A stretch of 64,000 nucleotides of DNA, from contig NIVC01000232.1 in assembly GCA_002269645.1 (NCBI GenBank), positions 319,684 to 383,683 of the forward strand, written 5' to 3'. Source of the stretch: Macrostomum lignano. Lineage: Eukaryota. This document shows, piece after piece, positions 2,318 through 47,200 of the stretch. The number at the start of each line of letters is the position of its first letter. Positions within the stretch are counted from its first letter, which is position 1. Under the pieces are notes generated by a model. That model saw nothing but the letters and a program-made list of their open reading frames with translations. It was not told the DNA's origin and searched no databases. The translations under genes were made by a program, and so were the position numbers.

Positions 2318-2691
2318 TTAAGCGGGACCGGCCGGGGTAGCAGGCAGACAGGCTGACAGGCAGGCTGTCAACCCCTGCATGGACTGAAGATTTGTTTGCT
2401 AAGAGGGTATACGTTGAGCAGACGTAGTCGCCACGAACAATGTAGAGTACTGCCCGAGAGACAGAGCTAGTCTATACAGAGGCCAAGTGAGGCAATGAAT
2501 CGTAGGGTGTACGTACCTGTCCCGTGTTTTCCCAGGGGAGACTTAGGGTGCAGACAGTGTTGGCAGAGAATACAGAAAAGTTGGGACTGCATGGAAGCCA
2601 GGGTACTTTTAGCTCGCTTCAGGTGCACTGTTTGCCATCGGGCTGCCTGCATGGCGGAAAAGAGAAAATAGTCATCAATCAGCCTATCGAC

Positions 2692-2706
2692 CTATCTATC
2701 TATCTG

Positions 2707-2761
<55 letters not shown>

Positions 2762-2842
2762 GTCTATCTATCTATCTATCTGTCTATCTATCTACCTATC
2801 TATTTATCTATTTATCTATCTATCTATCTATCTATCTATCTG

Positions 2843-2878
<36 letters not shown>

Positions 2879-2954
2879 CCTATCTATTTATGTATCTATC
2901 TATCTATCTGTCTATCTATCTATCTGTCTATCTGTCTAACTATCTATCTATCTG

Positions 2955-2991
<37 letters not shown>

Positions 2992-3014
2992 TTATGTATC
3001 TATCTATATATCTG

Positions 3015-3057
<43 letters not shown>

Positions 3058-3078
3058 GTCTATCTATCTGTCTATCTG

Positions 3079-3143
<65 letters not shown>

Positions 3144-3185
3144 GTATCTATCTATCTATCTGTCTATCTATCTATCTATCTATCA

Positions 3186-3237
<52 letters not shown>

Positions 3238-3246
3238 GTCTATCTG

Positions 3247-3329
<83 letters not shown>

Positions 3330-3366
3330 GTCTATCTATCTATCTGTCTATCTATCTATCTATCTG

Positions 3367-3398
<32 letters not shown>

Positions 3399-3474
3399 CC
3401 TATCTATTTATGTATCTATCTATCTATCTGTCTATCTATCTATCTGTCTATCTGTCTAACTATCTATCTATCTG

Positions 3475-3507
<33 letters not shown>

Positions 3508-3530
3508 TTATGTATCTATCTATCTATCTG

Positions 3531-3563
<33 letters not shown>

Positions 3564-3830
3564 TTATGTATCTATCTATCTATCTGTCTATCTGTCTATC
3601 TATCTATCTATCTGTCTATCTGTCTATCTATCTATCTATGTATCTATCTATCTATCTGTCTATCTATCTATCTGTCTATCTATCTATCTATCTGTCTATC
3701 TATCTATCTATCTATCTATCTATGTATCTATCTATCTATCTGTCTATCTATCTATCTGTCTATCTGTCTATCTATCTATCTATCTGTCTATCTATCTATC
3801 CATATGTCTATTTATGTATCTATCTAACTC

Positions 3831-3885
<55 letters not shown>

Positions 3886-3906
3886 GTCTATCTATCTGTC
3901 TATCTG

Positions 3907-3951
<45 letters not shown>

Positions 3952-4014
3952 GTATCTATCTATCTATCTGTCTATCTATCTATCTGTCTATCTATCTATC
4001 TATCTATCTATCTG

Positions 4015-4051
<37 letters not shown>

Positions 4052-4158
4052 GTATCTATCTATCTATCTGTCTATCTATCTATCTGTCTATCTGTCTATC
4101 TATCTATCTATCTGTCTATCTATCTATCCATATGTCTATTTATGTATCTATCTAACTC

Positions 4159-4217
<59 letters not shown>

Positions 4218-4350
4218 GTCTATCTATCTATCTGTCTATCTGTCTATCTATCTATCTATCTGTCTGTCTATCTATCTATCTATCTCTCTATCTATCTGTC
4301 TATTTATGTATCTATCTATTTATCTATTTGCATATCTATACATTTATCTA
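2692..4350. repeat. (TATC)n/(GATA)n microsatellite, ~1.66 kb, with TGTC/TATG variants
   Basis: Seen directly; it accounts for the spurious YLSI ORFs. Confidence 0.98.
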
Positions 4351-19000: not shown

Positions 19001-21997
19001 AGGAGGGGAATCAAGACACCAGGAGGGGAATCAAGACACCAGGAGGGGAATCAAGACACCAGGAGGGGAATCAAGACACCAGGAGGGGAATCAAGACCCA
19101 GGGAGGGGAATCAAGACACAAGGGGAATCAAGACACCAGTAGGGGAATCAAGACACCAGGAGGGGAATCAAGATACCAGGAGGGGAATCAAGACACCAGG
19201 AGGGGAATCAAGACACCAGGAGGGGAATCAAGACACCAGGAGGGGAATCAAGACACCAGGAAGGGAATCAATACACAAGGAGGGGAATCAAGACACCAGG
19301 AGGGGAAGCAAGACACCAGGAGGGGAAGCAAGACACCAGGAGGGGAATCAAGACACCAGGAGGGGAATCAAGACACCAGGAGGGGAATCAAGACACCAGG
19401 AGGGGAATCAAGACACCAGGAGGGGAATCAAGACACCAGGAGGGGAATCAACACCAGGAGGGAATCAAGACACCAGGAGGGGAATCAAGACACCAGGAGG
19501 GGAATCAACACCAGGAGGGAATCAAGACACAGGGAGGGGAATCAAGACACCAGGAGGGGAATCAAGACACAGGGAGGGGAATCAAGACACAGGGAGGGGA
19601 ATCAAGACACAGGGAGGGGAATCAAGACACAGGGAGGGGAATCAAGACACAGGGAGGGGAATCAAGACACAGGGAGGGGAATCAAGACACCAGGAGGGGA
19701 ATCAAGACACGGGGAGGGGAATCAAGACACCAGGAGGGGAATCAAGATACAAGGAGGGGAATCAAGACACCAGGAGGGGAATCAAGACACCAGGAGAGGA
19801 ATCAAGACACCAGGAGGGGAATCAAGACACCAGGAGGGGAATCAAGACACCAGGAGGGGAATCAAGACACCAGGAGGGGAATCAAGACACCAGGAGGGGA
19901 ATCAAGACACCAGGAGGGGAATCAAGACACCAGGAGGGGAATCAAGACACCAGGAGGGGAATCAAGACACCAGGAGGGGAATCAAGACACCAGGAGGGGA
20001 ATCAAGACACCAGGAGGGGAATCAAGACACCAGGAGGGGAATCAAGACACCAGGAGGGGAATCAAGACACAGGGAGGGGAATCAAGACACCAGGAGGGGA
20101 ATCAAGACACAGGGAGGGGAATCAAGACACCAGGAGGGGAATCAAGACACAGGGAGGGGAATCAAGACACAGGGAGGGGAATCAAGACACCAGGAGGGGA
20201 ATCAAGACACAGGGAGGGGAATCAAGACACAGGGAGGGGAATCAAGACACCAGGAGGGGAATCAAGACACAGAGAGGGGAATCAAGACACAGGGAGGGGA
20301 ATCAATACACCAGGAGGGGAATCAAGACACAGAGAGGGGAATCAAGACACAGGGAGGGGAATCAAGACACCAGGAGGGGAATCAACACCAGGAGGGAATC
20401 AAGACACAGGGAGGGGAATCAAGACACCAGGAGGGGAATCAAGACACAGGGAGGGGAATCAAGACACCAGGAGGGGAATCAAGACACAGGGAGGGGAATC
20501 AAGACACCAGGAGGGGAATCAAGACACAGGGAGGGAATCAAGACACCAGGAGGGGAATCAAGACACGGGGAGGGGAATCAAGACACCAGGAGGGAAATCA
20601 AGACACAGGGAGGGGAATCAAGACACAGGGAGGGGAATCAAGACACCAGGAGGGGAATCAAGACACAGAGAGGGGAATCAAGACACAGGGAGGGGAATCA
20701 AGACACCAGGAGGGGAATCAAGACACAGAGAGGGGAATCAAGACACAGGGAGGGGAATCAAGACACCAGGAGGGGAATCAACACCAGGAGGGAATCAAGA
20801 CACAGGGAGGGGAATCAAGACACCAGGAGGGGAATCAAGACACAGGGAGGGGAATCAAGACACCAGGAGGGGAATCAAGACACAGGGAGGGGAATCAAGA
20901 CACAGGGAGGGGAATCAAGACACCAGGAGGGGAATCAAGACACGGGGAGGGGAATCAAGACACCAGGAGGGAAATCAAGACACAGGGAGGGGAATCAAGA
21001 CACAGGGAGGGGAATCAAGACACCAGGAGGGGAATCAAGACACAGAGAGGGGAATCAAGACACAGGGAGGGGAATCAAGACACCAGGAGGGGAATCAAGA
21101 CACAGAGAGGGGAATCAAGACACAGGGAGGGGAATCAAGACACCAGGAGGGGAATCAAGACACAGAGAGGGGAATCAAGACACAGGGAGGGGAATCAAGA
21201 CACCAGGAGGGGAATCAAGACACAGGGAGGGGAATCAAGACACGAGGAGGGGAATCAAGACACCAGGAGGGGAATCAAGACACCAGGAGGGAATCAAGAC
21301 ACAGGGAGGGGAATCAAGACACCAGGAGGGGAATCAAGACACAGGGAGGGGAATCAAGACACAGGGAGGGGAATCAAGACACAGGGAGGGGAATCAAGAC
21401 ACAGGGAGGGGAATCAAGACACAGGGAGGGGAATCAAGACACCAGTAGGGGAATCAAGACACGAGGAGGGGAATCAAGACACCAGAAGGGGAATCAAGAC
21501 ACCATTTATCTCTCATAAATCCAATTTTGTATAAAAACAATTTCAGCGACTCAGACTCATCAAGCCATCAGGAGCAGCCGTTTGGCTCCCGTCAGTCAGC
21601 CAGAAGAATATCAGATCCGGTGCCTCTGTGGCAGCTTCAGCAACAACAACAACAACAACAACAGCAAGAACATCAGCACCAGGCTCATTCCAAACCACCT
21701 CAGATGCCTTCAGACCAAGCCAAGCGCAGCGGCAGCGCCGGCCGCCCCAACTCTGCAGCCAGCGGCGCCGCCAAAGGCGCCAACAGCGGGAACTCCTCGA
21801 CATCAGCTCTGCAAGCCTACAAGCGGGCTAAAGCAGCTACCGGTTCTGCTGCATCATCATCATCAGCATCCCCTGCTCTAGCTTGGTCGGCATCTCCTCG
21901 CAGAGAAATCGTTTACCCCTGCGCCAAGTGCAATAAACCGTTTAAGCTGAAAAGCGACTTGGCTGTGCATAAGAACTACTGCTCTGGAAAGACTTGA
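10016..21997 (+). CDS. CCDC157: Coiled-coil domain-containing protein 157, 796 aa; exons 10016-10263, 10930-11107, 12021-12395, 13642-13942, 14096-14454, 14952-15120, 15984-16293, 21547-21997
   Basis: The N-terminus MAHLLGSEYC...GPV..SWKFPD..ACDLD...SHIVLLELVIDR matches the CCDC157 N-terminus as recalled. Long coiled coil; EYPDLNGP and GDPLADM motifs. All junctions are GT-AG and phase-consistent, totalling 2391 nt. The exon 7 acceptor could alternatively be 15990. Confidence 0.88.
10299..10835. repeat. Intronic 20-bp minisatellite AGGTATTCACTTCAGGACAC
   Basis: Seen directly, CCDC157 intron 1. Confidence 0.95.
11197..11905. repeat. Intronic ~23-bp minisatellite GGCGCCAATTTCAGTATCAAAAA
   Basis: Seen directly, CCDC157 intron 2. 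Confidence 0.93.
12403..13618. repeat. Intronic 21-22 bp minisatellite GAATCACCTGTTAGATCATTTA
   Basis: Fills almost all of CCDC157 intron 3. Confidence 0.95.
14466..14760. repeat. Intronic 21-bp minisatellite AATTAGTTGCTAGGGCCGCTA
   Basis: Starts just after the exon 5 donor and decays downstream. Confidence 0.9.
15172..15352. repeat. GAGT/GAGG purine-rich simple repeat
   Basis: Seen directly, CCDC157 intron 6. Confidence 0.85.
16378..21503. repeat. 5.1-kb intronic 20-bp minisatellite GGAGGGGAATCAAGACACCA
   Basis: About 250 units; occupies nearly all of CCDC157 intron 7 (16294-21546); explains the 575/428 aa repeat ORFs. Confidence 0.98.
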
Positions 21998-32702: not shown

Positions 32703-33214
32703 AAAATTTAACAAAAATAACAAGAAAATTTCAATCCACGGTCATGATTTTCCTTGCTACTCTACTAATCGTGTAACAGTCAGTAGAAAGTAAAGAAAAG
32801 GTTACTTTTTTTAAAAAAACTCATAAAGTTACATAAAAAAATTCACAATATTCGCAAGCACTGTTTATTTGTAGCAATCGTGAGCAGTATTAAGGGTAAT
32901 CTGTAATAACTAGATAACTATTTTGTATTATTACATTTACATCATCAATTAGAATCTAAATCATCTGAATCTGAATGAATCATACATTTGCTTTTTATTG
33001 ACTTTTAAATATTTTAGCTAAAAACCTTACAATCTAGGCAGATACAGTGTGTACAGAGCCTGTTATTAGTTAATGGCCAAATTTCTACTCAGTATAATTC
33101 CACATATTATTGTACATGTGCAGACACATTTCTGGCTACAGCAACAGCAAAGAATTAAACTTCAATAGCAGATCGATAATTTCATGATTAGTCGATGAAT
33201 AAAATTGATAAGGA

Positions 33215-33420
33215 GACTAGGGTGAGACTGGAGTGAGATCGTAAAGAAAGAACAGAAGAGATTATGGAGATTTATGGCAAAATTGGGGCGAGATTAGGGT
33301 GTGATTAGGGTGAGACTAGGGTGAGATTAGGGTGAGACTCGGGTGAGATTTGGGTGAGATTTGGGTGAACTGGCCGGTGGGATTAAGTTGAGATTAGGGT
33401 GAGATTAGCATGAGAGTGGA
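33215..33420. repeat. Degenerate 11-bp repeat GGTGAGATTAG; a related patch lies at ~28440-28590
   Basis: Seen directly. Confidence 0.75.
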
Positions 33421-33675
33421 TAGGAAAACTTCAGTGAGAATCTGAAAGCTTCACAGAACATGATTGCGAGACCTTACGAGCTACAGAGGTAAAGCGGGGT
33501 GAAAAATAAAACAGAATGACAAAAGATATATATAACAAAAACAAAAAAGAAATAAAGTAAGCGGAGCTAACAAAGGAGCTGACACAATGCTTGGAGGCGA
33601 GAGTCAAGAACAGGAGAGAAAGACAGCACCAGAGGAATCGCACGAAGCAGCACATGTTTTGTCTTCATCAGTTGT

Positions 33676-34344
33676 TTACGCCTTCTCAGTTTTCTTCATT
33701 CGCGACCTGCGCCCGAAACAGGCGCCAAGGCGACTAGAAATTTTCGACTTCTTCCTCCCAGCTTCATAAGCAACATCAGCTGCGGTCTCGAACACTTCGG
33801 TGACATTCTCCCGAGTTTTGGCGCTGCACAGGAAATGACTGGTAGCTCCAATATTGTCAGCCAGCTTCTCAACTTCATCTCGGGTGACGCAGTCGGCCGC
33901 CGAGCTCGCCAAGTCGTTCTTGCAACCGACAAGCAGCAGAGCCGCCCTGGGGCAGTAGTGCCGCACCTCCGGGTACCAGGTGTCGCGGACATTGTTGAAG
34001 CTGTCCCGGCTGTCCATGGCGAAGCAGATCAGGATGACGTGGGTGTCAGTGTAGGACAGCGGCCGGAGTCTGGCGTAGGCCTCCTGACCAGCGGTGTCCC
34101 ACAGGCTCAATGCAATCACCTTGCCCGGCCGAATCTCCATGTCAACTATGCTGGTCTCGAATATTGTCGGCACGTAGGCTTCGTAGAACTCGTCTCTGGT
34201 GAAGGCGAACAGCAGGGAGGTCTTGCCGCAGGTGCCGTCGCCCACGATCACCAGCTTCCTAGTTGGGTATTCGCCATCAGCGCTGGCGCCACCGCCAATT
34301 GACGAGGTGCTTCTTCGGCGAAAGAAATTTTTTCTGTTAACCAT
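33676..34344 (-). CDS. Rho-family small GTPase, atypical, 222 aa, single coding exon (ATG at 34344)
   Basis: KLVIVGDGTCGKT, YVPTIFE, LWDTAGQE, RLRPLSY, GCKND and CSAK motifs. A strong acceptor ctccctag| lies 20 nt upstream of the ATG. Confidence 0.9.
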   Translation of the reverse strand: MVNRKNFFRRRSTSSIGGGASADGEYPTRKLVIVGDGTCGKTSLLFAFTRDEFYEAYVPTIFETSIVDMEIRPGKVIALSLWDTAGQEAYARLRPLSYTDTHVILICFAMDSRDSFNNVRDTWYPEVRHYCPRAALLLVGCKNDLASSAADCVTRDEVEKLADNIGATSHFLCSAKTRENVTEVFETAADVAYEAGRKKSKISSRLGACFGRRSRMKKTEKA

Positions 34345-35004
34345 TGCTTTGGGTCTCAAGTTAGCTAGGGAGAGAGGGAGAGAGCGAGACAGAGAAAATA
34401 TTTCAATGCGTTATAACAAATCTTGAGCTTGGGGGGTCAGGCCAGCAATATATAATCAACTGAGTCTATTTTTAGAAACTGAAAGCAGAAACGGGTAGAC
34501 AGAGAGGTAGAGGTAGAAGACAAGCTAAGCTCTACAGGGTGGGCCGCGCAAGCAGGTCTGTGAAAGCAAACGAATATCTATACATAATTGGCTCGCAGTT
34601 GTAGAGGTAAAATGCGCTAGGAGGGAGGTAGAGGTTGGGGTCGGCGCTGGTCTCGAATGTGCAGATGTGTTTACGAAAGACGGTATAAGGCGTAAGCAAA
34701 TGTGAAAGACCATAAATGTACAGACGAGTAGAATTCTGTGTTTCTGTTTCGAGAGGCATTTAGAAAGTGTGCGTACTAGCGCTATGTCGTCAGTACCTAA
34801 AATTAGACATGCATTTTGTTATAAGCCCATAATTGCGAAGCGATAGATATTTGCTAGGTTTTTAAAGCTTTTCTAGTTAATAAATGGCAAGGGTTTCTTA
34901 TCTCTTTTTGTATGGCGTTTTTAGCTCATATGCTGAATTGCCTGAACACTTGCCTGCAGCTATGACCTGACACCTAAAGCATATACGGGTATATATTCAT
35001 AGAG

Positions 35005-36530
35005 CACTTGCTGGAAAGGAGAGGTTGGGAAGGGAGGCAGAGAGGAGAGAGAGAAAGGAGAGGTTGGGAAGGGAGGCAGAGAGGAGAGAGAGAAAGGAGA
35101 GGTTGGGAAGGGAGGCAGAGAGGAGAGAGAGAAAGGAGAGGTTGGGAAGGGAGGCAGAGAGGAGAGAGAGAAAGGAGAGGTTGGGAAGGGAGGCGAAGAG
35201 GAGAGGTTGGGGAAGGGAGGCAGAGAGGAGAGGGAGAAAGGAGAGGTTGGGAAGGGAGGCAGAGAGGAGAGGTTGGGAAGGGAGGCAGAGAGGAGAGGTT
35301 GGGAAGGGAGGCAGAGAGGAGAGGTTGGGAAGGGAGGCAGAGAGGAGAGGTTGGGAAGGGAGGCAGAGAGGAGAGGTTGGGAAGGGAGGCAGAGAGGAGA
35401 GGTTGGGAAGGGAGGCAGAGAGGAGAGGTTTGGAAGGGAGGCAGAGAGGAGAGGTTGGGAAGGGAGGCAGAGAGGAGAGGGAGAAAGGAGAGGTTGGGAA
35501 GGGAGGCAGAGAGGAGAGGGAGAAAGGAGAGGTTGGGAAGGGAGGCAGAGAGGAGAGGGAGAAAGGAGAGGTTGGGAAGGGAGGCAGAGAGGAGAGGTTG
35601 GGAAGGGAGGCAGAGAGGAGAGGGAGAAAGGGGAGGTTGGGAAGGGAGGCAGAGAGGAGAGGGAGAAAGGAGAGGTTGGGAAGGGAGGCAGAGAGGAGAG
35701 GGAGAAAGGAGAGGTTGGGAAGGGAGGCAGAGAGGAGAGGGAGAAAGGAGAGGTTGGGAAGGGAGGCAGAGAGGAGAGGTTGGGAAGGGAGGCAGAGAGG
35801 AGAGGGAGAAAGGGGAGGTTGGGAAGGGAGGCAGAGAGGAGAGGTTGGGAAGGGAGGCAGAGAGGAGAGGTTGGGAAGGGAGGCAGAGAGGAGAGGGAGA
35901 AAGGAGAGGTTGGGAAGGGAGGCAGAGAGGAGAGGTTGGGAAGGGAGGCAGAGAGGAGAGGGAGAAAGGAGAGGTTGGGAAGGGAGGCAGAGAGGAGAGG
36001 GAGAAAGGAGAGGTTGGGAAGGGAGGCAGAGAGGAGAGGGAGAAAGGAGAGGTTGGGAAGGGAGGCAGGGAGGAGAGGGAGAAAGGAGAGGTTGGGAAGG
36101 GAGGCAGAGAGGAGAGGGAGAAAGGAGAGGTTGGGAAGGGAGGCAGAGAGGAGAGGGAGAAAGGAGAGGTTGGGAAGGGAGGCAGAGAGGAGAGGGAGAA
36201 AGGAGAGGTTGAGAAGGGAGGCAGAGAGGAGAGGGAGAAAGGAGAGGTTGGGAAGGGAGGCAGAGAGGAGAGGGAGAAAGGAGAGGTTGGGAAGGGAGGC
36301 AGAGAGGAGAGGGAGAAAGGAGAGGTTGGGAAGGGAGGCAGAGAGGAGAGGGAGAAAGGAGAGGTTGGGAAGGGAGGCAGGGAGGAGAGGGAGAAAGGAG
36401 AGGTTGGGAAGGGAGGCAGAGAGGAGAGGGAGAAAGGAGAGGTTGGGAAGGGAGGCAGAGAGGAGAGGGAGAAAGGAGAGGTTGGGAAGGGAGGCAGAGA
36501 GGAGAGGGAGAAAGGAGAGAAAGAGAAGAG
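35005..36530. repeat. Purine-rich minisatellite with 24/36-bp units (GGAGAGGTTGGGAAGGGAGGCAGAGA +/- GGAGAGGGAGAAA)
   Basis: Seen directly; source of the R/E/G-rich ORFs. Confidence 0.95.
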
Positions 36531-37210
36531 AGGAAACCACAGGATCGAGGCTAAAAAGAGTTAAAAAGAGGAGATTAACACGATTAATTCATGGGAGTTC
36601 GGTATTGTATTTCTCTAAATTCTTAATTAAAAAAGGAGAAATGCATGTAGAAATGAGACAGAAGTTAATCAAGCCTAAAAATATTGCTATTCAGCTGCGA
36701 AAAATGTGTTACAACTATAACAATCAAGTTTTGTAGACGAACTTTATAAGCTTAGACGTGAATTAAAAAAGTTGTCAAGGTGTTTGTTAATTATAGGCGC
36801 TGTCAGATTGATCAGCGGAAATCAATTAAACCCAACTGAAAACAGAACAGAGATTGAGAGATTGTTTCCAAGTCTTTTTTCAATACAGTCGTGACATTGT
36901 TGTGCGGTTACATTAAACTTTTAGCGTTTCAGCTGCATAATAGGCAGAACAGCTGTAACTGCAGGAGACTGGAAATTAGAGAAGATCACAGCAGTGTATG
37001 TTGATGTAGAACTGCTTTAAACCAGATTCGCCCCTGATACAATTTCTGCATCATTGAAATTTTTGTAAACACAAATTTTATAACTGCGAACTATGAAGAT
37101 TTCACAAATTTATACAATTGAATTTGAAACCAGCCCCATGCAGATGTTGTTATACTTTCTGTTGTGTATTGCAAAGGCATGCGATGCGTAGGGGTAGTTC
37201 GGGGACAGCG

Positions 37211-37327
37211 TTTCTAGAAACTTCCACCACGGACTTGTTTACGCATAGTTCCAGAAGTTTCCTTCCCCGGTCTTTCTAGAACTTTCCTTCCCCGCGTGCA
37301 TAAATATACGAGCCGCCCTCCTATTGG
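37211..37327. promoter_or_regulatory. Heat-shock-type promoter: three perfect 3-unit HSEs plus TATA-like, GC and CCAAT boxes
   Basis: tTTCtaGAAacTTCc at 37211-37225, gTTCcaGAAgtTTCc at 37248-37262, tTTCtaGAActTTCc at 37273-37287. CATAAATA at 37298-37305; CCGCCC at ~37313; ATTGG at 37323-37327. Confidence 0.75.
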
Positions 37328-37876
37328 CCAAGCCCCTTCTTTTGGTGCCACTGAGCGCCCGGATAATTATCTATCTTGTTTCTGCGTTCGTTAATTCAAC
37401 AACAGAACACTTTCTTGTGCACTCAGTATTTTCTGTGAAAATTTGCTTGTATGTACGGATTGCTTGCGCAAATGCGCATAACAACAGCTTTATTTTAATG
37501 TATTTAAATCAGATTGATCACGCAATTTGGCCTGCATGTACGATTTATGGGCATGTATGACTAACAATTTTTATCTATGATATCCAAGTCTTCAGTTGAG
37601 AATGAGCAGAATATTTTGCCTACATCAGCTGGGTCGGCAGGCTCTCTGTACGGCTCTCGGGTCGACCTTTGGAACTTCAGATCAATGGCAATCCGGTTGC
37701 CATGCTCAAGGTTTGCGTCTCTTCTCAGCGTCCTCTGGCGCTTCTCTCCCCTCTTATCTCTCCTCTCCTCTTTTCTCTCTTCCCTCTCCTTTCATCTCTT
37801 ATCTTTCCTCTTCTTTCTTCCCTCTCGATTTATCTCTTATCTCTCCTCTCTTCCCTCTCCCTTTATTTCTTATCTC

Positions 37877-39676
37877 CAGTGTTGCCACTGAGCATTGTGA
37901 CAAAAAAAACGCTGAGAGAAAAAAATAACACAGTGCATTTTCATCGTAGATATTACTAATATATTGTCACTAATGATTAACAACAACAATAACAGTTGAA
38001 GACCAACCCCACCTAGAAATACCAAAGTGATAATTAACCAGTAAAGAGACTGAATAACAATTGGAATGACGGGAGTACGACGTTTGCTTGCGGGAAGTTT
38101 GCTTGCAGGAATTTTGCTAGCCGAACTTTGCTTGCGGAATTTTGCTTGCAGGAATTTTGCCTGCCGAACTTTGCTTGCGGAATTTTGCTAGCCGAACTTT
38201 GCTTGCGGAATTTTGCTAGCCGAACTTTGCTTGCCGAACTTTGCTTGCAGGAATTTTGCCTGCCGAACTTTGCTTGCGGAATTTTGCTAGCCGAACTTTG
38301 CTAGCCGAACTTTGCTTGCAGGAATTTTGCCTGCCGAACTTTGCTAGCCGAACTTTGCTTGCAGGAATTTTGCCTGCCGAACTTTGCTTGCGGAATTTTG
38401 CTAGCCGAACTTTGCTAGCCGAACTTTGCTTGCAGGAATTTTGCCTGCCGAACTTTGCTTGCGGAATTTTGCTAGCCGAACTTTGCTAGCCGAACTTTGC
38501 TTGCAGGAATTTTGCTAGCCGAACTTTGCTAGCCGAACTTTGCTAGCCGAACTTTGCTTGCAGGAATTTTGCTAGCCGAACTTTGCTTGCGGAATTTTGC
38601 TAGCCGAACTTTGCTTGCAGGAATTTTGCTAGCCGAACTTTGCTTGCGGAATTTTGCTAGCCGAACTTTGCTTGCGGAATTTTGCCTGCCGAACTTTGCT
38701 TGCGGAAATTTGCTTGCCGAACTTTGCTTGCTGAAGTTTGCTTGCAGGAATTCTGCTTGCAGGAACTTTGCTTGCCGAACTTTGCTTGCAGAATTTCGAT
38801 GTCTGCTTCCTAGAAATTCGCAATCACAATTGCAAGGTTTTAACTTGCCGAATTAGATTATTTTCTTGTCTGCTTGCTTGTTTTGATTGCTTGTGAAGTT
38901 GGTCCGTCAATTATTACTTACTACAGATGCTTTGCAAGTGGATTCTTATCAGCGTCGACGTAAACTGACTTGACACTGAGCTTTCAAACTAGGCTTATAG
39001 AGTTTCATTCTAAGAGTTTAGGGGTCGCAATATAAAGCTGTCGTAGCGTAAGTTCGATCGTACGTCGGAACTTTTACACTACGGAGATAGGAGCTAAGAA
39101 CGATCTTATCTTACGATGTTCTGCATTAGGGCTTTTCAAATCCGCCATATCCTCATACAAAATCATAACACTATAGGCGACTTTCACGAATCTTAAAAAA
39201 CAAAAATTAGAAATACAAGAGCTCAATAATAGGTTCTTTAAGGTTCCGCAAGAAAACTCTGGCTGGCAAATCTCGGCAAGCAAAGTTCCTGCAAGCAAAC
39301 TTCGGCAAGCAAACTTCGGCAAGCAAACTTCGGCAGGCAAAATTCCGCAAGCAAAGTTCGGCAAGCAGACTTTGGCAAGCAAAATTCTGCAAGTAAAGTT
39401 CGGCAAGCAAAGTTCGGCAAGCAAATTTCCGCAAGCAAAAGTCCCGCAAGCAAACTTCTCGCAAGCAAATTTCATCGACCCCGTTCGATTACCAGCCGAT
39501 CCAATGCAAATTGTGTCAGGCGCACGGCAACGTCCTGGTCTTTCCCTTGCGCCTTGCGCAACCTCTCAATCGCTAGCTGAACTTCTCTTTTTTACGGTCA
39601 GAATTATTCATTGAAAAAACGCAGGAAAAAGGAATTCAGCAAATAAAAACACAAAACGCCAAGAGTGGCAACACTG
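37877..39676. mobile_element. 1.8-kb non-autonomous hAT-like DNA transposon with 13-bp TIR CAGTGTTGCCACT and 8-bp TSD CTTATCTC
   Basis: The TIRs at both ends match perfectly. CTTATCTC lies at 37869-37876 and 39677-39684. Removing the element plus one TSD restores the host repeat unit. No transposase ORF. Confidence 0.85.
38085..38795 (+). repeat. Internal repeat array of the hAT-like element (GCCGAACTTTGCTTGC / GGAATTTTGCTA)
   Basis: Seen directly; an inverted sibling array lies at 39255-39475. Confidence 0.9.
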
Positions 39677-39942
39677 CTTATCTCTCCTCTTCTCTCTTCC
39701 CTCTCCCTTTAATCTCTTATCTCTCATCTTCTCTCTTCCCTCTCCCTTTTATCTCTTATCTCTCCTCTTCTCTTCTCTCTTCCCTCTCCCTTTATTTCTT
39801 ATCTCTCCTCTTCTCTCTTCCCTCTCCCTTTTATCTCTTATCTCTCCTCTTCTCTCCCCTCTCCCTTTATTTCTTATCTCTCCTCTTCTCTCTCCCCTCT
39901 CCCTTTTATCTCTTATCTCTCCTCTCTTCTCCCTCTCCTCTC
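39677..39942. repeat. Pyrimidine-rich ~38-bp minisatellite split by the transposon; its other part is at 37737-37876
   Basis: The same CTTATCTCTCCTCTTCTCTC unit occurs on both sides of the element. Confidence 0.85.
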
Positions 39943-41144
39943 GTTTCAGCTGTCTCATATGGTCCGCAGCCATCGGGCTGCATTCTTTATCTGGTCGTTG
40001 AGGCAAAAAGTAAGAAGGCCCCGCATGGTCTATACACACACGATCAAGGCTATGAAATGAATGAATAAGCTTTAATGAAAAAATACTTGAAAATGCTAAC
40101 TATATCTGACAGAAGTTACAGCCCTGTTGTTTGGACTTTGACACACCGAATCTCAAGCCATGGTCTATGATTCAGTAACAGATGTCCACAATACACATGC
40201 GCATGGCCCAAAACTTAAAGCTTAAAAACTAAGGTACAAATATGGCCATAAATTAATCGTAGTTCACATTCAAAGCACCGTGTACACCTTCAAACATGCA
40301 AGGGTAAGAGATAATACATTCTCTGTGTCCAGGGAGACTCCCCCATACGATGGCAGCGTACTAACCCAAACCAAATCTGCTTAACTCGGATTTTTTTTGC
40401 ACAAATAAAAATGAAGCAAAAACCTCTCAAAAAAAACCAGAGCTGTTTCTTTAATTGTCATCATCAGTCTGAAAGGTACCCAGCAACCAGCACGTGCAGA
40501 ATACGTGTAAAGCAACACATATTTATGCATATTTAATTGAATTCAAAATTAACATACTCATTAATACATAATAATAGGATACAATAACAATAATGATAAA
40601 CGAATGAGTTGAATGCAAACCAGCACAGAATATATATGTATTAGATTTGCTACTATCAGTAGTCGCTAAATAATAAGACATTTATTCTATTGAAAAGTTG
40701 GCCAAAATTGCAACATTATTATTAATAATAATGATAATATACTTAAACAATAATTGACAGCAATTTTACTACACACGCACACAAAGCGACGAAGCAGCGC
40801 AGCAACTCTGACTAAAAAGCATCGGAAATCCAAGACAAGTACGTTTAGATTCGAAAAAAAACATCGCGAATAAACAGACGAGAAGATACGAGCTTAATTA
40901 ACTTTTGAACGATTTCAAACAAACTAAAACAACAAAGACGAAATTAACGAATTCCCGGAAAGCTCTCAGGGTAGGTAACGGGTGCACAGACAGGTAGACA
41001 GAGGCATCGAGCAACTGCATCTTGTGATGGTGCAGACACCAGATCAAAGAGCAGATTTGCTTAGATTTGTTAAATCAGACTAATAAAAAAATTTTTCTTT
41101 CGGAATGGTTACGGCTGTTACTGGGGAAGGTGATTCTGAGGGAA

Positions 41145-41955
41145 AGGGGCGTCTCAGTGAGATTATCCAAGTAGTTTGGGGGAGAATCTCAATGAGATTA
41201 TCCAAGTAGTTTGGGGGAGAATCTAAATGAGATTATCCTAGTTGTTCGGGGGAGACTTTCAATGAGATTATCCTAGTTGTTCGGGGGAGACTTTCAATGA
41301 GATTATCCAAGTAGTTTTGAGGAGAATCTCAATGAGATTATCCTAGTTGTTCGGGGGAGAATCTCAATGAGATTATCCTAGTAGTGTGGGGTAGAATCTC
41401 AATGAGATTATCCTAGTAGTTAGGGGGAGACTTTCAATGAGATTATCCAAGTAGTTTTGAGAAGAATCTCAATGAGATTATCCAAGTAGTTTGGGGGAGA
41501 ATCTAAATGAGATTATCCTAGTTGTTCGGGGGAGACTTTCAATGAGATTATCCAAGTAGTTTTGAGGAGAATCTCAATGAGGTTATCCAAGTAATTTGGG
41601 GGAGAATCTAAATGAGATTATCCTAATAGTATGGGGGAAGAGTCTTAATGAGATTTTTCTAGTAGTTCGGGGGGGGGGAGACTTTCAATGAGATTATCCA
41701 AGTAGTTTTGAGGAGAATCTCAATGAGGTTATCCAAGTAGTTTGGGGGAGAATCTAAATGAGATTATCATAATAGTATGGGGGAAGAGTCTTAATGAGAT
41801 TTTTCTAGTAGTTCGGGGGGGGGACTTTCAATGAGATTATCCTAATAGTATGGGGGGAACCTAAATGAGATTAATAAGTAGTTTGAGGAAGAATCTCAAT
41901 GAGTACAATCTAATTATCCTAAGTTTGGGGAAGAGTCTCAGTGAGATTATCCTTG
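41145..41955. repeat. ~35-bp minisatellite AATGAGATTATCCAAGTAGTTTGGGGGAGAATCTC
   Basis: Seen directly, downstream of SRP9. Confidence 0.92.
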
Positions 41956-42013
41956 CGGTTCAATCAAAGGATGGAGTGACTGATGGTTAATTAGACTAGC
42001 TATTAATAGACAC

Positions 42014-42244
42014 CTACTTAGATACCAGCTGCCGCATCAATTGACTCGTTAGTTTTTCCAGCTTTTTAACGTCTTGCGCGTGTTCAGTTTTGTACTTGAC
42101 GGTCACGTGATCGTTAGTAACCTTGAGCACCAGCACTCCTTGAGCCGGCTGGTAGCTGACGGTTACTCGACACCGTTTTGGATCTTCAGCGAACATCATG
42201 TCCACCACTTGGGCGAATTGCTCCCAGGTCTCTGCGATTGTCAT
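42014..42244 (-). CDS. SRP9: Signal recognition particle 9 kDa protein, 76 aa
   Basis: TWEQF...DPKRCRV...LKVTND..TVKYKTEHAQDVKKLEKLTSQLMR matches the SRP9 family pattern. Confidence 0.93.
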   Translation of the reverse strand: MTIAETWEQFAQVVDMMFAEDPKRCRVTVSYQPAQGVLVLKVTNDHVTVKYKTEHAQDVKKLEKLTSQLMRQLVSK

Positions 42245-42496
42245 GGCCTAAACTGATTTCGAGAAGTCAGCTGCGATGCAATGGGGATCGAGACGAGATT
42301 ATCGCTGCGATAGCCTTTGGCTGGAAATTGAAAAATAGAAACAATAGAAACTTTATGGGCTATGCTAGCGACGATACCACAATACATGCAATAAGCCATT
42401 GATTACTTTAACTCTAATTCTATAGGGAAGTTCGACAACAATTAGGCGTCATTTTGGCAAAGGGATAAATTTGCGTAAAGGGATTCTTATGAGATA

Positions 42497-43622
42497 ATCT
42501 TTGAGTACGGGGTCAGTTAGGGAATGGGATCATCTTTGAGTATAGGGTCAGTTAGGGAATGGGATAATCTTTGAGTACGGGGTCAGTTAGGGAATGGGAT
42601 AATCTTTGAGTATGGGGTCAGTTAGGGAATGGGATAATCTTTGAGTATGGGGTCAGTTAGGGAATGGGATAATCTTTGAGTATGGGTCAGTTAGGGAATG
42701 GGATAATCTTTGAGTATGGGGTCAGTTAGGGAATGGGATAATCTTTGAGTATGGGGTCAGTTAGGGAATGGGATAATCTTTGAGTATGGGGTCAGTTAGG
42801 GAATGGGATAATCTTTGAGTATGGGGTCAGTTAGGGAATGGGATAATCTTTGAGTATGGGGTCAGTTAGGGAATGGGATAATCTTTGAGTATGGGGTCAG
42901 TTAGGGAATGGGATAATCTTTGAGTATGGGGTCAGTTAGGGAATGGGATAATCTTCGAGTATAGGGTCAGTTAGGGAATGGGATAATCTTTGAGTACGGG
43001 GTCAGTTAGGGAATGGGATAATCTTTGAGTATGGGGTCAGTTAGGGAATGGGATAATCTTTGAGTATAGGGTCAGTTAGGGAATGGGATAATATTTGAGT
43101 AGGGGGTCAGTTAGGGAATGGGATAATCTTTGAGTATGGGGTCAGTTAGGGAATGGGATAATCCTTGAGTAGGGGGTCAGTAAGGGAATGGGATAATGCT
43201 TGAGTAGGGGGTCAGTAAGGGAATGGAATAATCCTTGAGTAGGGGGTCAGTAAGGGAATGGAATAATCCTTGAGTAGGGGGTCAGTAAGGGAATGGGATA
43301 ATATTTGTGTAGGGGGTCAGTAAGGGAATGGGATAATATTTGAGTAGGGGGTCAGTAAGGGAATGGGATAATATTTAAGTAGGGGGTCAGTAAGGGAATG
43401 GGATAATCTTTGTGTAGGGGGTCAGTAAGGGAATGGGATAATCTTTGAGTAGGCGGGGGGTCACTTAGGGAATGGGATAATCTTTCAGTAGGTGGGAGTC
43501 ACTTAGGGAATGGGATAATCTTTGAGTAGGTCGGGGTCACTTAGGGAATGGGATAATCTTTCAGTAGGTCGGGGTCACTTAGGGAATGGGATAATCTTTG
43601 AGTAGGTCGGGGTCACTTAGGG
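42497..43622. repeat. ~34-bp minisatellite GGGTCAGTTAGGGAATGGGATAATCTTTGAGTAT
   Basis: Seen directly, between the hnRNP U stop and SRP9. Confidence 0.95.
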
Positions 43623-44244
43623 AATAACCGTGGTCTATCTGTCAGGGACTATCAGTACAGATTAATCGGAAATTAATAAGCGATACACACCTAAAGTGTG
43701 AGTGAGCACTTGTAGCCGATAAAAATGACACAAAACCAACTGAAAAAGCAGATTAGCAGCAGTGAGCCGCCAATGCAAAGGGGGGGGGCATTTATTGTAT
43801 TAAACGGTAGCAACTTACAACATAAAAATATGCTTAATTATATCGTATGGTAACTACTTGACGATAACTATGTGCGAATAAGATAAATTTTCAAGTTTCA
43901 ATGACAGCAATAAATGGATTAATAATGTAACACTAGGAATTGGGGTAAAAAACACGAAGCTACTATAAGTAGTAATGCATGAAACAAATTATCCGATGCT
44001 AGTTGCGAAGATTACGCGCAGATTATATTTACACAGAAATTAACCCAAACAAACACACAGCAGGATAGACGATAGCTAAACAAAAAAGACTGAAAAAATT
44101 AATAATAGTAAAAAAACAGTTTGGGATTTGTGAATAATAATAATAACAATAATAAACTTCAGACTACTCACATTCAGGCGTTGGTAATTAAACAAAAGGT
44201 AACAATAAAATGGTCAACAATCAATCAAATCAATCAATCAGTGC

Positions 44245-47200
44245 TTAGTTGAAACCGGGGGGCCACTGCTGCGGTGGGGGCTGGGCGCCAAAGGCGGCAG
44301 CCGCAGACTGGTGCTGATGGTCGATGGTGGCCCAGGCAGAGCCGCCAGCAGCCTGCTGCTGCTGCTGCTGTTGAAAGGCCTGCTGGAACTGAGGCTGCTG
44401 CTGCTGCTGCAGGTACATCTGCGGCATCTGCTGGGCCGGCAACGGAGGCGGAGGCGGCGGCGGTTGGGCAGCTAAAGCGGCTACAGCGCCCAGCTGCTGA
44501 GCCAACTGCTGCTGCTGTGGTGGCGGCATCAGCGAAGCCGCCGGCTGAGCCTGCGGCGGCGGGGGCGGTGGAGGCGGCAGCGCCTGGCCAAATCGACCAC
44601 CGCCGCCGCCGCCGCGTCCGCCGCCGAATCGATTACCGCCGCCACCGCCGCCGCCACCGGGCATCTGGGCCATGGACGGCGGCAGCAGAGGTTGGATCTG
44701 CTGTTGCATCAGCTCGCCGACAACTCCGCCACCTCCGCCGCCACCTCCTGGAGGCCGCTGACGCCAGCCGTCTCGATGACCACCTCCGCCGCCGCCTCGG
44801 CCTCCACCGAAACGATCAGACGGCTGGTGATCGCGCCTGCTGTTGTAACCTCCCCGATTGCCGAAACCGGCCCCGATGCCGCCGCCTCCGCCTCGATCAA
44901 ATCTGCCGCCACCGCCGCCGAAGCGTCCACCGCCAGAAAAGTCGTCACGACGGTGCGACTGATGGTCACCGCCTCCCCCGAATCGGCCGAAGCCTCCGCC
45001 TCCTCCTCCGCGGCCTCCGAAACCGCCGCCGCCGCCGCCGCCTCCGCGGAAGTCTCGTCGATCGTTGCGGAAGCCACCGCCGCCGCCGCCACCGCCGCGG
45101 AAATCTCGACGTCCCTGGTCGTGCCGGTGCCTGTCGCGATCCCGGTCCCGGTCTCTGTCCCGGTGATCTCGCCCTCGATCGCGGTTCCGATCCCTGTCCC
45201 GGTCGCGATCCCGGTCCCGATCCCGGCCGTCCCGATCTCGGTCCCGACTAGAATTGTCGTCGCGGCCGCTGTCGAACCGGGACCCCCCAGGGCGTCGGGA
45301 AGACGACGATGAGCCGCCACCACCGCCGCTGCTGCCGCCTCCAGTCTTGACGGAGCCCTCCTTGTTGTACTGGGCAACAGCTTCTCGAGCTTCAGCCTCC
45401 GGCAGGTCCGGGAATATCAACTCGTCGAATAGTTCAGCATCAGGTATGGCGAATTTAGCTGTCGGGCGAATTGTTTGTTGGACGATTTCGAGGAAAGGGA
45501 GGCGGGGGGGGGGCGGGGGTTGATGTTGGATTATATTGAGAACCTTCAGGAGATTGACAATTGCACACTATATAATATAATTCAGAGGGAGTCACGATCT
45601 CGATGATGCTACTAAAACATTAAGTAGTAGCTAAGTAGTATGCGCTGCGTATTCCTTTCATTTTTTTAACAATCCAAACCTGTTAAAATAGGGCAAAAAC
45701 TTAAACACGAAAATAGGCATTATAATTTACCTTACCTACTACTTAAATAGACAGTAGAATGTGACGCAAAAAATAACAAATTAATACATATACATATAAA
45801 AAAAACACAATAAAAAACGAGCATTGGCAACCTTTCATCTCTAGCAAGTCGGACTCCGCGACTTCTTTGCCGACCTCTTTAACACGGGGCAGGGCTAGCC
45901 GTTCGGCGGAATCCTTAGCCGACGGTACAATAACAACGGCGGCACGCCTAAAACCGGCGAATGGCCGGATACGCTGGGCTTGGCCGGCTGGTACAACGTT
46001 GGTCTTCGGTTCGGCGTTAAATAAAAAAATGAAGGGGGAGAGGGAGAGATCTTTTTTCTGTTTTCTGGTCTTGCAAGTTGCAGCTCCGCTGTGGCACGTC
46101 AGCTCTCGGCTCTCACACACGAGGGTTGAATGCGGGACTGGGAGGCAGGACAGAGAAATCAATCACTGGGTCCGGTCATTCTCGTTGCGGATGATGCTCC
46201 CTACTACTACTAACATATAAGTAGCTAGTATGCGCATAATTTAAAAGAAAAGTCAGCGGAGGCGAGAGGAAATGCGTGGACAATATATGAATTGTATGAT
46301 AAATATAAACAATACATACATATATATTCACTGTTTTATGTAGCAAAAACTCGAAAAAAGAAATATTAGTCTCACCAAATCGATGATGTAATTCCTTCGG
46401 CGAAGGGCAGCCAGCTGGCATAGGGTGGCAACGCAAGCGGTGGCCCGCTGAGGGAACAGTTGCCAGCGCTGCGGGTGAGTCAGGTCGCGCCTGGACTGGC
46501 CGGCCACCTGAGAACGAAATCAATTAATATAAACATTATGAAATGCTCAATATTGATAAACAAATAACTGTTTGCCAAATTACTAAAAGGCAATACTACT
46601 GATAACAATTCGAAACTGTTAAGAATTATTGCCCCTAGCGATTTGCCAGTTGGTCCTTTTTTAGGAACAAAAATACTATTGCACAGTTACTACACCGTTG
46701 GTGATACGATCAATTGAATATTGAAGTCACCGCGGCTCTAGGCTGTGCGCAGAGTCCTAGGGGATTAGGGAGTCTGGCCCAGCAACTGAGGATCTGGGAG
46801 TCTGGCCCAGCAACTCAGGATCTGGGAGGTTGGCCCAGCAACTGAGGATCTGGGAGGCTGGCCCAGCAACTGAGGATCTGGGAGTCTGGCCCAGCAACTG
46901 AGGATCTGGGAGTCTGGTGCCCAGCAACTGAGGATCTGGGAGTCTGGTGCCCAGCAACTGAGGATCTGGGAGTCTGGCCCAGCAACTGAGGATCTGGGAG
47001 GCTGGCGGCCAGCAACTGAGGATCTGGGAGTCTGGCCCAGCAACTGAGGATCTGGGAGTCTGGCCCAGCAACTGAGGATCTGGGAGGCTGGTGCCCCAGC
47101 AACTGAGGATCTGGGAGTCTGGTGCCCCAGCAACTGAGGATCTGGGAGGCTGGAAAAAAGCAACAAAAGCTATTACAGCAGCCAGCAAATCACTTACACT

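What the first reader, a model, noticed from the sequence alone, without database searches (positions are those of the whole stretch)
37211..40430. Orphan heat-shock promoter with three perfect HSEs and a candidate spliced non-coding transcript
Seen: three perfect nTTCnnGAAnnTTCn elements within 77 bp, the last ending 10 nt before CATAAATA, plus GC and CCAAT boxes. Established: clustered HSEs just upstream of a TATA box are the architecture of HSF1-driven hsp promoters. Yet there is no chaperone gene in the window. Downstream on + there is a coherent set of splice signals: donor GTATGT ~37449, acceptor TTCAG|37596, donor AAG|GT 37711, acceptor TTTCAG|39950, donor AAA|GTAAGA 40010, acceptor GTCCAG| ~40332 and AATAAA ~40404. 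I found no recognisable ORF in any frame. Inference: a heat-inducible lncRNA or micropeptide gene, conceptually like Drosophila hsr-omega, converging on the SRP9 3' region. Alternatively the HSEs drive the atypical Rho on the - strand (TATAAA at ~37076-37114, 5'UTR acceptor at 34365).
Basis: partly seen in the sequence, partly recalled or inferred. Interest (0 to 1): 0.75.

Follow-up and report, generated by a model that had tools for sequence, protein, structure and literature searches.

The report
Solo LTR of heat-activated flatworm retrotransposon
The "orphan heat-shock promoter" is a 250-bp leftover end piece (solo LTR) of a published heat-activated retrotransposon family of the flatworm Macrostomum lignano, so it is a mobile-element promoter that recently landed between two host genes, not a hidden heat-shock gene.

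Summary
Three perfect HSEs (37211-37287) lie 11 nt upstream of CATAAATA (37299), and they are the only three in 64 kb.

The window is Macrostomum lignano Mlig_3_7 (GCA_002269645.1, contig NIVC01000232.1). HSEs, TATA box and putative start site all lie in a clean 250-bp insertion (37160-37409). It has TG...CA ends and a 5-bp target-site duplication (CTTTC). It is absent from two paralogous copies of the locus in the same assembly, which show the empty site.

[quoted passage not shown] Both published cloning primers match its ends exactly. That family is induced about 250-fold at 37 °C, and its LTR needs these HSEs to drive a reporter (PMC12801592).

The downstream "exons" are ancestral flanking DNA, also present in the promoter-less paralogues. 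They are no better conserved than the "introns". The 66-aa spliced ORF has frame-shifting indels between copies and no homologue.

Most likely the LTR drives heat-induced read-through transcription into the flank; that step is inferred. The kind is already known.

The parts
37155..37159 (.). Left copy of the 5-bp target-site duplication, CTTTC
   Evidence: The empty site in L001 and L003 contains a single CTTTC.
37160..37409 (+). Solo LTR (250 bp, TGTTGTG...CAGAACA) of Mlig-id115|Mag (preprint name Mlig_LTR-RT_ID206|Mag), Ty3/Mdg4 superfamily
   Evidence: 242-243 of 251-252 aligned columns are identical to the published KU60 LTR promoter (machine-read text). The published cloning primers match exactly at 37160-37178 and 37389-37409. 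The insert is absent from paralogues L001 and L003.
37211..37225 (+). HSE 1, TTTCTAGAAACTTCC
   Evidence: It fits the family pattern nTTCnaGAAnnTTCc quoted in PMC12801592.
37248..37262 (+). HSE 2, GTTCCAGAAGTTTCC
37273..37287 (+). HSE 3, TTTCTAGAACTTTCC
37299..37306 (+). TATA box, CATAAATA (end of U3)
   Evidence: The published figure legend says a putative TATA box is marked in the LTR, but the highlighting is lost in the stored text, so equating it with CATAAATA is my reading.
37330..37409 (+). Inferred R/U5 of the LTR. The start site about 25-30 nt after the TATA box is inferred. No ATG lies between the TATA box and the LTR end.
   Evidence: One search shows no ATG. In the published reporter the coding sequence was fused directly to the LTR end and was expressed after heat. 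Transcripts therefore run out of the LTR.
37410..37414 (.). Right copy of the target-site duplication, CTTTC
37410..40430 (+). Ancestral flanking DNA into which LTR-driven transcription would read. They are best seen as possible cryptic exons and not as a gene.
   Evidence: The region is present in the promoter-less paralogues. Candidate exons are 3.4% variable and non-exon segments 2.9%. The copies differ by -4 and +1 indels.
37877..39676 (.). It has a 13-bp TIR (CAGTGTTGCCACT), an 8-bp TSD (CTTATCTC) and internal inverted arrays of a 14-bp repeat.
   Evidence: It is present in L001; both TIRs are absent from L003.
33676..34344 (-). Single-exon RhoA-like GTPase gene, the divergent neighbour. 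Candidate TATA boxes on the minus strand at ~37116-37110 and ~37082-37076 are conserved at least in part in all three copies.
42014..42244 (-). Single-exon SRP9 gene, the convergent neighbour

Best explanation
Window 37160-37409 is a solo LTR of the Macrostomum lignano retrotransposon family Mlig-id115|Mag (preprint name ID206|Mag), which belongs to the Mag clade of the Ty3/Mdg4 superfamily.

Origin (inferred from standard LTR biology). A full-length element integrated at the target CTTTC, between the divergent RhoA-like gene and the convergent SRP9 gene. This happened in only one of the three paralogous or allelic copies of the locus. LTR-LTR recombination later removed the internal part and left one LTR.

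Promoter. The U3 part of the LTR carries three canonical HSEs and a TATA box. For this family it has been shown experimentally that transcripts rise about 250-fold (log2FC 8.1) after 2 h at 37 °C. An isolated LTR drives a downstream reporter only when the HSEs are intact.

Mechanism at this locus (inferred, not shown). On heat stress, heat-shock factor binds the three HSEs. Transcription starts about 25-30 nt after CATAAATA and runs through the 80-nt R/U5 into the flanking host DNA on the + strand. The next AATAAA signals are at 39642 and 40404.

The 66-aa ORF and the 'exons' are incidental. The HSEs sit about 100-175 bp from conserved TATA-like boxes on the minus strand, so they could also act as a heat enhancer for this Rho copy. 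That is possible but untested.
For: Organism and locus. The SRP9 protein of the window is found in NCBI GCA_002269645.1 at three loci. The paper names that accession as M. lignano Mlig_3_7. Window 33000-44500 is 100% identical to L002 (NIVC01000232.1).

Insertion. A three-way alignment shows a clean 255-bp difference. L001 and L003 read GTGCACAAGAAAGTATAACAAC (locus orientation) across the site. The window has the insert bounded by a duplicated CTTTC and by TG...CA ends with a short imperfect inverted repeat (TGTTGTGT / TGTTCTGT).

Direction of the event. Next to the insert (36540-37159) the window and L003 each have 1 private difference in about 620 bp, while L001 has 20. A deletion scenario would therefore need two independent identical losses.

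Identity. The insert aligns over its full length with the published LTR promoter in plasmid KU60 (243 of 252 and 242 of 251 aligned columns against two machine-read printings). Both cloning primers match the LTR ends exactly. All three HSEs fit the family-specific pattern nTTCnaGAAnnTTCc. One difference (CACCACGG in the window, CACCGCGG in print) is the same in both printings, so the cloned LTR came from another copy.

Function of the family. There are 19 full-length copies with three HSEs; log2FC is 8.1 (padj 4.8e-182); HSE mutation abolishes heat induction; the reporter was fused directly to the LTR end.

No host gene. No gene is called between SRP9 and Rho at any of the three loci. No homologue of the 66-aa ORF was found. 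The copies differ by -4 and +1 indels in the candidate exons. The candidate exons are not more conserved than the rest. Rfam gave no hit.
Against: No expression data for this particular copy could be examined. It may be silenced, for example by piRNA or chromatin mechanisms.

The published LTR sequence was available only as machine-read PDF text, so the exact percentage identity is uncertain; the primers, ends and HSEs are unambiguous. I could not scan the whole M. lignano genome for other copies myself, so the copy number rests on the paper.

The splice model was not tested. The 66-codon ORF stays open in all three copies because the -4 and +1 indels compensate. That could hint at some constraint, but exon 3 is simply open in two frames.
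Confidence: 0.95

Rival explanations
1. Domesticated LTR. The solo LTR has been co-opted as the promoter of a functional heat-inducible gene with the reader's exon structure, either a lncRNA or the 66-aa micropeptide.
For: The LTR promoter is intact: three HSEs plus a TATA box. Exon 1 has no ATG, and the first ATG opens an ORF spanning all three junctions. The ORF remains open in L001 and L003 through compensating -4 and +1 indels. AATAAA at 40404 is conserved in all three copies.
Against: The insertion is very recent and specific to one copy, which leaves little time for selection. The exons are not more conserved than the introns: 3.4% against 2.9% variable sites. Exon 3 is read in different frames in different copies. 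No homologue was found among 5.8 billion proteins, and no gene model exists at any of the three loci. 'Intron 2' is a minisatellite plus a transposon. A CT-rich satellite followed by AG will always look like a good acceptor.
Confidence: 0.05
2. Enhancer for the neighbouring gene. The three HSEs, being orientation-independent, make this copy of the divergent RhoA-like gene heat-inducible. It can hold together with the best explanation.
For: TATAAAT and TATAAAA boxes lie on the minus strand at ~37116-37110 and ~37082-37076. They are 45-85 bp from the LTR edge and about 100-175 bp from the HSEs, and are conserved at least in part in the paralogues. The paper reports solo LTRs of these families within 2 kb of two mildly heat-upregulated host genes.
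Against: The Rho transcription start is unknown. The acceptor at 34365 could be a trans-splice site, and the paper's own annotation shows that many M. lignano transcripts are trans-spliced. The candidate 5' exon contains ATGs. No RhoA-like or SRP9 entry was found in the stored part of the differential-expression table, but that table is truncated and cannot separate paralogues.
Confidence: 0.2
3. Silent relic. The solo LTR is epigenetically silenced, produces no transcript and has no effect on its neighbours.
For: Hosts commonly silence transposable elements. The published reporter was not expressed in the gonads, and the authors raise possible silencing as one explanation.
Against: The family as a whole is strongly induced (log2FC 8.1). 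This copy keeps all the cis elements shown to be necessary.
Confidence: 0.25
4. Ancestral host heat-shock promoter that was deleted from the other two copies by microhomology-mediated deletion between the ACTTTCT repeats.
For: An indel bounded by a 5-7 bp direct repeat is formally compatible with a deletion.
Against: The segment matches a retrotransposon LTR exactly from TG to CA. The flanking sequence places the window with L003 and leaves L001 as the outlier, so two identical deletions would be needed.
Confidence: 0.01

Closest known systems
Mlig-id115|Mag (Mlig_LTR-RT_ID206|Mag) LTR retrotransposon of Macrostomum lignano (Ustyantsev et al., Mob DNA 2025, PMC12801592; preprint 10.1101/2024.12.18.629116)
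   Same: The same 250-bp LTR sequence from end to end, with the same three HSEs (nTTCnaGAAnnTTCc), the same TATA box, and the same species and assembly. This is membership, not analogy.
   Different: The window copy is a solo LTR with no gag-pol. It differs from the cloned LTR at a few positions. Its own expression and its effect on neighbours have not been reported individually.
ONSEN (ATCOPIA78), the heat-activated Ty1/Copia retrotransposon of Arabidopsis
   Same: HSEs in the LTR recruit heat-shock factor, and heat stress strongly induces transcription. New insertions can make neighbouring genes heat-responsive (my own knowledge).
   Different: It belongs to a different superfamily and kingdom, so the HSEs were acquired independently. 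HSF binding has been shown directly for ONSEN but not for the flatworm family.
Helitron1_CE of Caenorhabditis elegans
   Same: A transposon that carries HSEs and spreads heat-shock-responsive cis elements around the genome.
   Different: It is a rolling-circle DNA transposon and not an LTR. It has no TG...CA ends and no 5-bp TSD.
Drosophila hsr-omega
   Same: An HSE-driven promoter with no chaperone ORF downstream, and a possible non-coding heat-induced RNA that would traverse tandem repeats.
   Different: hsr-omega is a conserved single-copy host gene with its own promoter. Here the promoter is a recent transposon insertion absent from the paralogues, and the transcribed region shows no constraint.

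Membership tests
Solo LTR of Mlig-id115|Mag (Ty3/Mdg4, Mag clade) | Full-length sequence identity to the family's LTR | tested here: met
   242-243 of 251-252 aligned columns against the published KU60 LTR (machine-read text). Both cloning primers match exactly at the two ends.
Solo LTR of Mlig-id115|Mag (Ty3/Mdg4, Mag clade) | TG...CA termini with a short inverted repeat, and a 4-6 bp target-site duplication | tested here: met
   the ends are TGTTGTGT... and ...ACAGAACA, and the TSD is CTTTC/CTTTC.
Solo LTR of Mlig-id115|Mag (Ty3/Mdg4, Mag clade) | Empty site at homologous loci (insertion polymorphism) | tested here: met
   L001 and L003 lack exactly the insert plus one TSD copy.
Solo LTR of Mlig-id115|Mag (Ty3/Mdg4, Mag clade) | Three canonical HSEs upstream of a TATA box | tested here: met
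   The pattern matches the one quoted.
Solo LTR of Mlig-id115|Mag (Ty3/Mdg4, Mag clade) | Solo state: no adjacent primer-binding site, gag-pol or polypurine tract | tested here: met
   both flanks continue directly into sequence that is collinear with the paralogues; no pol-like ORF nearby.
Solo LTR of Mlig-id115|Mag (Ty3/Mdg4, Mag clade) | Multiple copies in the genome, including full-length elements flanked by this LTR | not testable with these tools
   No nucleotide search of the M. lignano genome is available. The paper reports 19 full-length copies. One consistent difference from the cloned LTR shows that at least a second copy exists.
Solo LTR of Mlig-id115|Mag (Ty3/Mdg4, Mag clade) | Heat-induced transcription from this particular copy | not testable with these tools
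   Only family-level RNA-seq and reporter data exist.
Host heat-shock protein gene promoter | A chaperone or co-chaperone coding sequence downstream | tested here: not met
   no such ORF; no gene model.
Host heat-shock protein gene promoter | Promoter conserved at paralogous or orthologous loci | tested here: not met
   no HSE in L001 or L003, and the site is empty.
hsr-omega-like heat-inducible lncRNA gene | A conserved transcription unit with its own heat-shock promoter | tested here: not met
   the promoter is a recent transposon insertion, and the candidate exons show no excess conservation.
hsr-omega-like heat-inducible lncRNA gene | A heat-induced, nuclear-retained transcript | not testable with these tools
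   No expression data could be mapped to this locus.
Micropeptide gene | ORF conserved at the protein level, with homologues | tested here: not met
   no homologue.: -4 and +1 indels put exon 3 in a different frame in L001 and L003.
hAT-type non-autonomous transposon (element at 37877-39676) | Terminal inverted repeats, an 8-bp TSD and an empty site | tested here: met
   a 13-bp perfect TIR and the TSD CTTATCTC; both TIRs are absent from L003. No transposase was available to confirm the superfamily.

The most novel reading that the evidence does not exclude
This one-copy-only solo LTR has rewired its neighbourhood. On heat stress it would produce a spliced chimeric RNA converging on SRP9, make this one RhoA-like paralogue heat-inducible, or both. 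That would be a natural within-genome experiment on regulatory divergence between duplicated loci caused by a heat-responsive transposon: three near-identical copies, only one carrying the LTR.
Probability: 0.3. Interest if true: 0.4.

Novelty: already known. Interest (0 to 1): 0.18.

Why it matters
The finding adds no new kind of element. HSE-bearing, heat-activated LTR retrotransposons of M. lignano were published in 2024-2025, and this LTR sequence is the very one they tested.

Two modest points of value remain. First, a reader working from sequence alone correctly recognised a functional heat-shock promoter, so the scan's motif reasoning works. It also needs a check for presence or absence at paralogous loci before a promoter is called 'orphan'. 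Second, the locus offers a clean natural comparison for asking whether a solo heat-responsive LTR changes expression of adjacent host genes: one LTR-bearing copy and two LTR-less copies of the same Rho/SRP9 block in one genome. The published study touched on that question only briefly.

Tried and rejected
- **Protein search with the 66-aa spliced ORF.** No candidate at all, so there is no support for a micropeptide.
- **Exact-protein look-up of the 222-aa Rho.** Nothing on record, because the deposited gene models start elsewhere (218, 221 and 226 aa). The SRP9 look-up worked and gave the three loci.
- **Self-BLAST of the promoter, exons and transposon against the window.** No second copy within the 64 kb. 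Taken alone, this would wrongly have suggested a unique sequence.
- **Reading the insert as a DNA transposon with a 7-bp TSD (ACTTTCT, insert 37161-37408).** Rejected in favour of TG...CA ends with a 5-bp TSD once the published LTR and primers matched 37160-37409 exactly.
- **Microhomology-mediated deletion in the other copies.** Rejected.
- **Rfam scan of the whole window.** No known RNA family.
- **Searches of the preprint's differential-expression table for SRP9, HNRNPU and Rho-family names.** No RhoA-like or SRP9 entry appeared in the stored part. The file is truncated and its gene IDs carry no coordinates, so this is uninformative. The Cdc42-like (log2FC 3.9) and Rac1-like (log2FC -2.2) entries fit the window's RhoA-like protein poorly and cannot be mapped to a locus.
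- **Full-length parent element.** I did not try to fetch one.
Full report
**Observation.** The sequence at 37211-37287 contains three perfect nTTCnnGAAnnTTCn elements: TTTCTAGAAACTTCC, GTTCCAGAAGTTTCC and TTTCTAGAACTTTCC. They are the only three in the 64-kb window. Shuffles give 1.35 per window, so the number is unremarkable, but having all three within 77 bp is far beyond chance. CATAAATA follows at 37299, 11 nt after the last HSE. The 'CCAAT box' is an inverted ATTGG located downstream of the TATA box.

**Where the window comes from.** The SRP9 protein encoded at 42244-42014 (minus strand) occurs in NCBI assembly GCA_002269645.1 at three loci. Each has the same gene order: hnRNPU-like, SRP9, RhoA-like GTPase. 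The paper cited below names that accession as Macrostomum lignano Mlig_3_7. Window 33000-44500 is 100% identical to locus L002 (contig NIVC01000232.1). L001 and L003 are paralogous or allelic copies with roughly 89-95% identity in the blocks that align. No gene is called between SRP9 and Rho at any of the three loci.

**The promoter is an insertion.** Only the window copy has HSEs. A three-way alignment shows a clean 255-bp difference. L001 and L003 run straight through the site (GTGCACAAGAAAGTATAACAAC in locus orientation). The window has an extra 250 bp (37160-37409) that begins TGTTGTG and ends CAGAACA and is flanked by a duplicated CTTTC. HSEs, TATA box and the presumed start site all lie inside this block. 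The donor of 'exon 1' (37449) and everything downstream is ancestral flanking DNA. In the 620 bp next to the insert, the window and L003 each have one private difference and L001 has twenty. A deletion scenario would therefore need two identical independent losses, so an insertion in the window lineage is the parsimonious reading.

**What the insertion is.** TG...CA ends, a 5-bp target-site duplication and a U3-like enhancer/TATA layout indicated a solo LTR. [quoted passage not shown]
- The preprint's Additional file 3 prints the LTR promoter of family ID206|Mag, called Mlig-id115|Mag in the journal version, as cloned into reporter plasmid KU60.
- Table S3 of the preprint gives the cloning primers.
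- The window insert aligns with that sequence from first to last base. Identity is 243 of 252 and 242 of 251 aligned columns against two machine-read printings that also differ from each other.
- The forward primer equals 37160-37178. The LTR part of the reverse primer equals 37389-37409.
- All three HSEs fit the family pattern nTTCnaGAAnnTTCc quoted in the Methods.
- One difference (CACCACGG in the window, CACCGCGG in print) is the same in both printings, so the cloned LTR came from another copy.

Both flanks continue collinearly with the paralogues, so this is a solo LTR and not part of a full-length element.

**What is known about the family (from the paper).**
- It has 19 full-length copies and three HSEs per LTR, and belongs to the Mag clade of Ty3/Mdg4.
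- Its transcripts rise with log2FC 8.1 (padj 4.8e-182) after 2 h at 37 °C, and respond within 5-15 min.
- The isolated LTR, fused at its last base to ATG-mScarlet, drives heat-dependent fluorescence in embryos and in a transgenic line.
- Mutating the HSEs abolishes the response.
- Direct HSF binding was not shown.
- The authors mention only two solo LTRs of the strongly induced families within 2 kb of mildly heat-upregulated host genes.

**How it most likely works here.** Shown: the cis elements necessary for heat induction are intact in this copy. In the reporter, transcripts initiated in the LTR run out of its 3' end. Inferred: on heat stress, HSF binds the three HSEs, and Pol II starts about 25-30 nt after CATAAATA. 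The 80-nt R/U5 contains no ATG. Transcription then continues on the + strand into host DNA, where the next AATAAA signals are at 39642 and 40404. Whether it does, and whether this copy is silenced, cannot be decided with the tools available.

**Why the downstream 'gene' is not supported.**
- The candidate exons exist in L001 and L003, which have no promoter there.
- The candidate exons vary at 9 of 266 aligned sites (3.4%), against 22 of 748 (2.9%) for the candidate introns and flanks.
- L001 and L003 share a 4-bp deletion in exon 2 and a 1-bp insertion in exon 3 relative to the window. The ORF stays open, but exon 3 is read in a different frame. That is incompatible with protein-level constraint.
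- The ORF has no homologue among 5.8 billion proteins.
- 'Intron 2' consists of a CT-rich 39-bp minisatellite interrupted by a 1.8-kb TIR transposon. A polypyrimidine satellite ending in AG inevitably resembles a strong acceptor.
- Rfam finds nothing in the window.

**The Rho alternative.** Conserved TATA-like boxes lie on the minus strand (~37116-37110 and ~37082-37076), 45-85 bp from the LTR edge. HSEs work in either orientation, so the insertion could confer heat inducibility on this RhoA-like copy (best PDB match RhoA, E = 5.6e-54). However, the Rho start site is unknown, and its acceptor at 34365 may be a trans-splice site. The stored, truncated part of the published differential-expression table has no RhoA-like or SRP9 entry and cannot separate paralogues. 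This remains an open, testable side hypothesis.

**Comparison and verdict.** Membership in the Mlig-id115|Mag LTR family is met on every feature that could be tested: sequence, ends, TSD, HSEs, empty site and solo state. It works like ONSEN of Arabidopsis and the HSE-bearing Helitrons of C. elegans. The resemblance to hsr-omega is superficial. The phenomenon and this very sequence are already published, so novelty is 'already known' and interest is low. The remaining value of the locus is as a natural one-of-three comparison for the effect of a heat-responsive solo LTR on neighbouring genes.

Noticed in passing
window 37877-39676 (TSD copies at 37869-37876 and 39677-39684): A 1.8-kb non-autonomous TIR element with a perfect 13-bp TIR (CAGTGTTGCCACT) and an 8-bp TSD (CTTATCTC), which is hAT-like. 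It is inserted in a CT-rich 39-bp minisatellite. Its interior holds arrays of a 14-bp repeat in opposite orientations (38083-38796 and 39244-39473), giving a foldback-like structure. It is present in L001 (TIRs at 12841 and 14678) and absent from L003.
   Followed up: partly
window, whole length (e.g. 16378-21504, 2684-4327, 35014-36533, 58528-59836): By eye from the array list, perhaps 40% of the window is minisatellite arrays with periods of 8-53 bp. The largest is a 20-bp unit repeated 258 times (5.1 kb, 55% GC) that creates long spurious ORFs.
   Followed up: no
window 41152-41903 and 42489-43625: The single-exon SRP9 gene (42244-42014, minus strand) is bracketed on both sides by two different 35-bp minisatellite arrays. 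The downstream one would lie inside a long 3' UTR if the first minus-strand AATAAA (~40688) is the one used.
   Followed up: no
window 33000-44500 versus L001 and L003: The three copies of the hnRNPU-like/SRP9/Rho block show mosaic relatedness. L001 has the long branch around the Rho upstream region and SRP9 (20 and 16 private differences against 1-2 for the others), while the branches are equal elsewhere. The hAT-like element is shared by the window and L001 but not by L003. This suggests recombination or gene conversion between copies, or a mix of alleles and homeologues in a redundant assembly.
   Followed up: partly
window 34344-33676 (minus strand): The RhoA-like GTPase is atypical. It has a ~25-aa basic/Ser-rich N-terminal extension, a GDGTCGKT P-loop (Thr where RhoA has Ala) and no C-terminal CAAX box (it ends ...RRSRMKKTEKA). 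The three paralogous gene models differ in length (218, 221 and 226 aa).
   Followed up: partly
window 37596-37710 and 39950-40009 versus L001 and L003: A 4-bp and a 1-bp indel in two separate segments compensate each other, so the same ATG-to-stop ORF stays open in all three copies although the middle part is read in another frame. This is probably coincidence, since that segment is open in two frames.
   Followed up: yes
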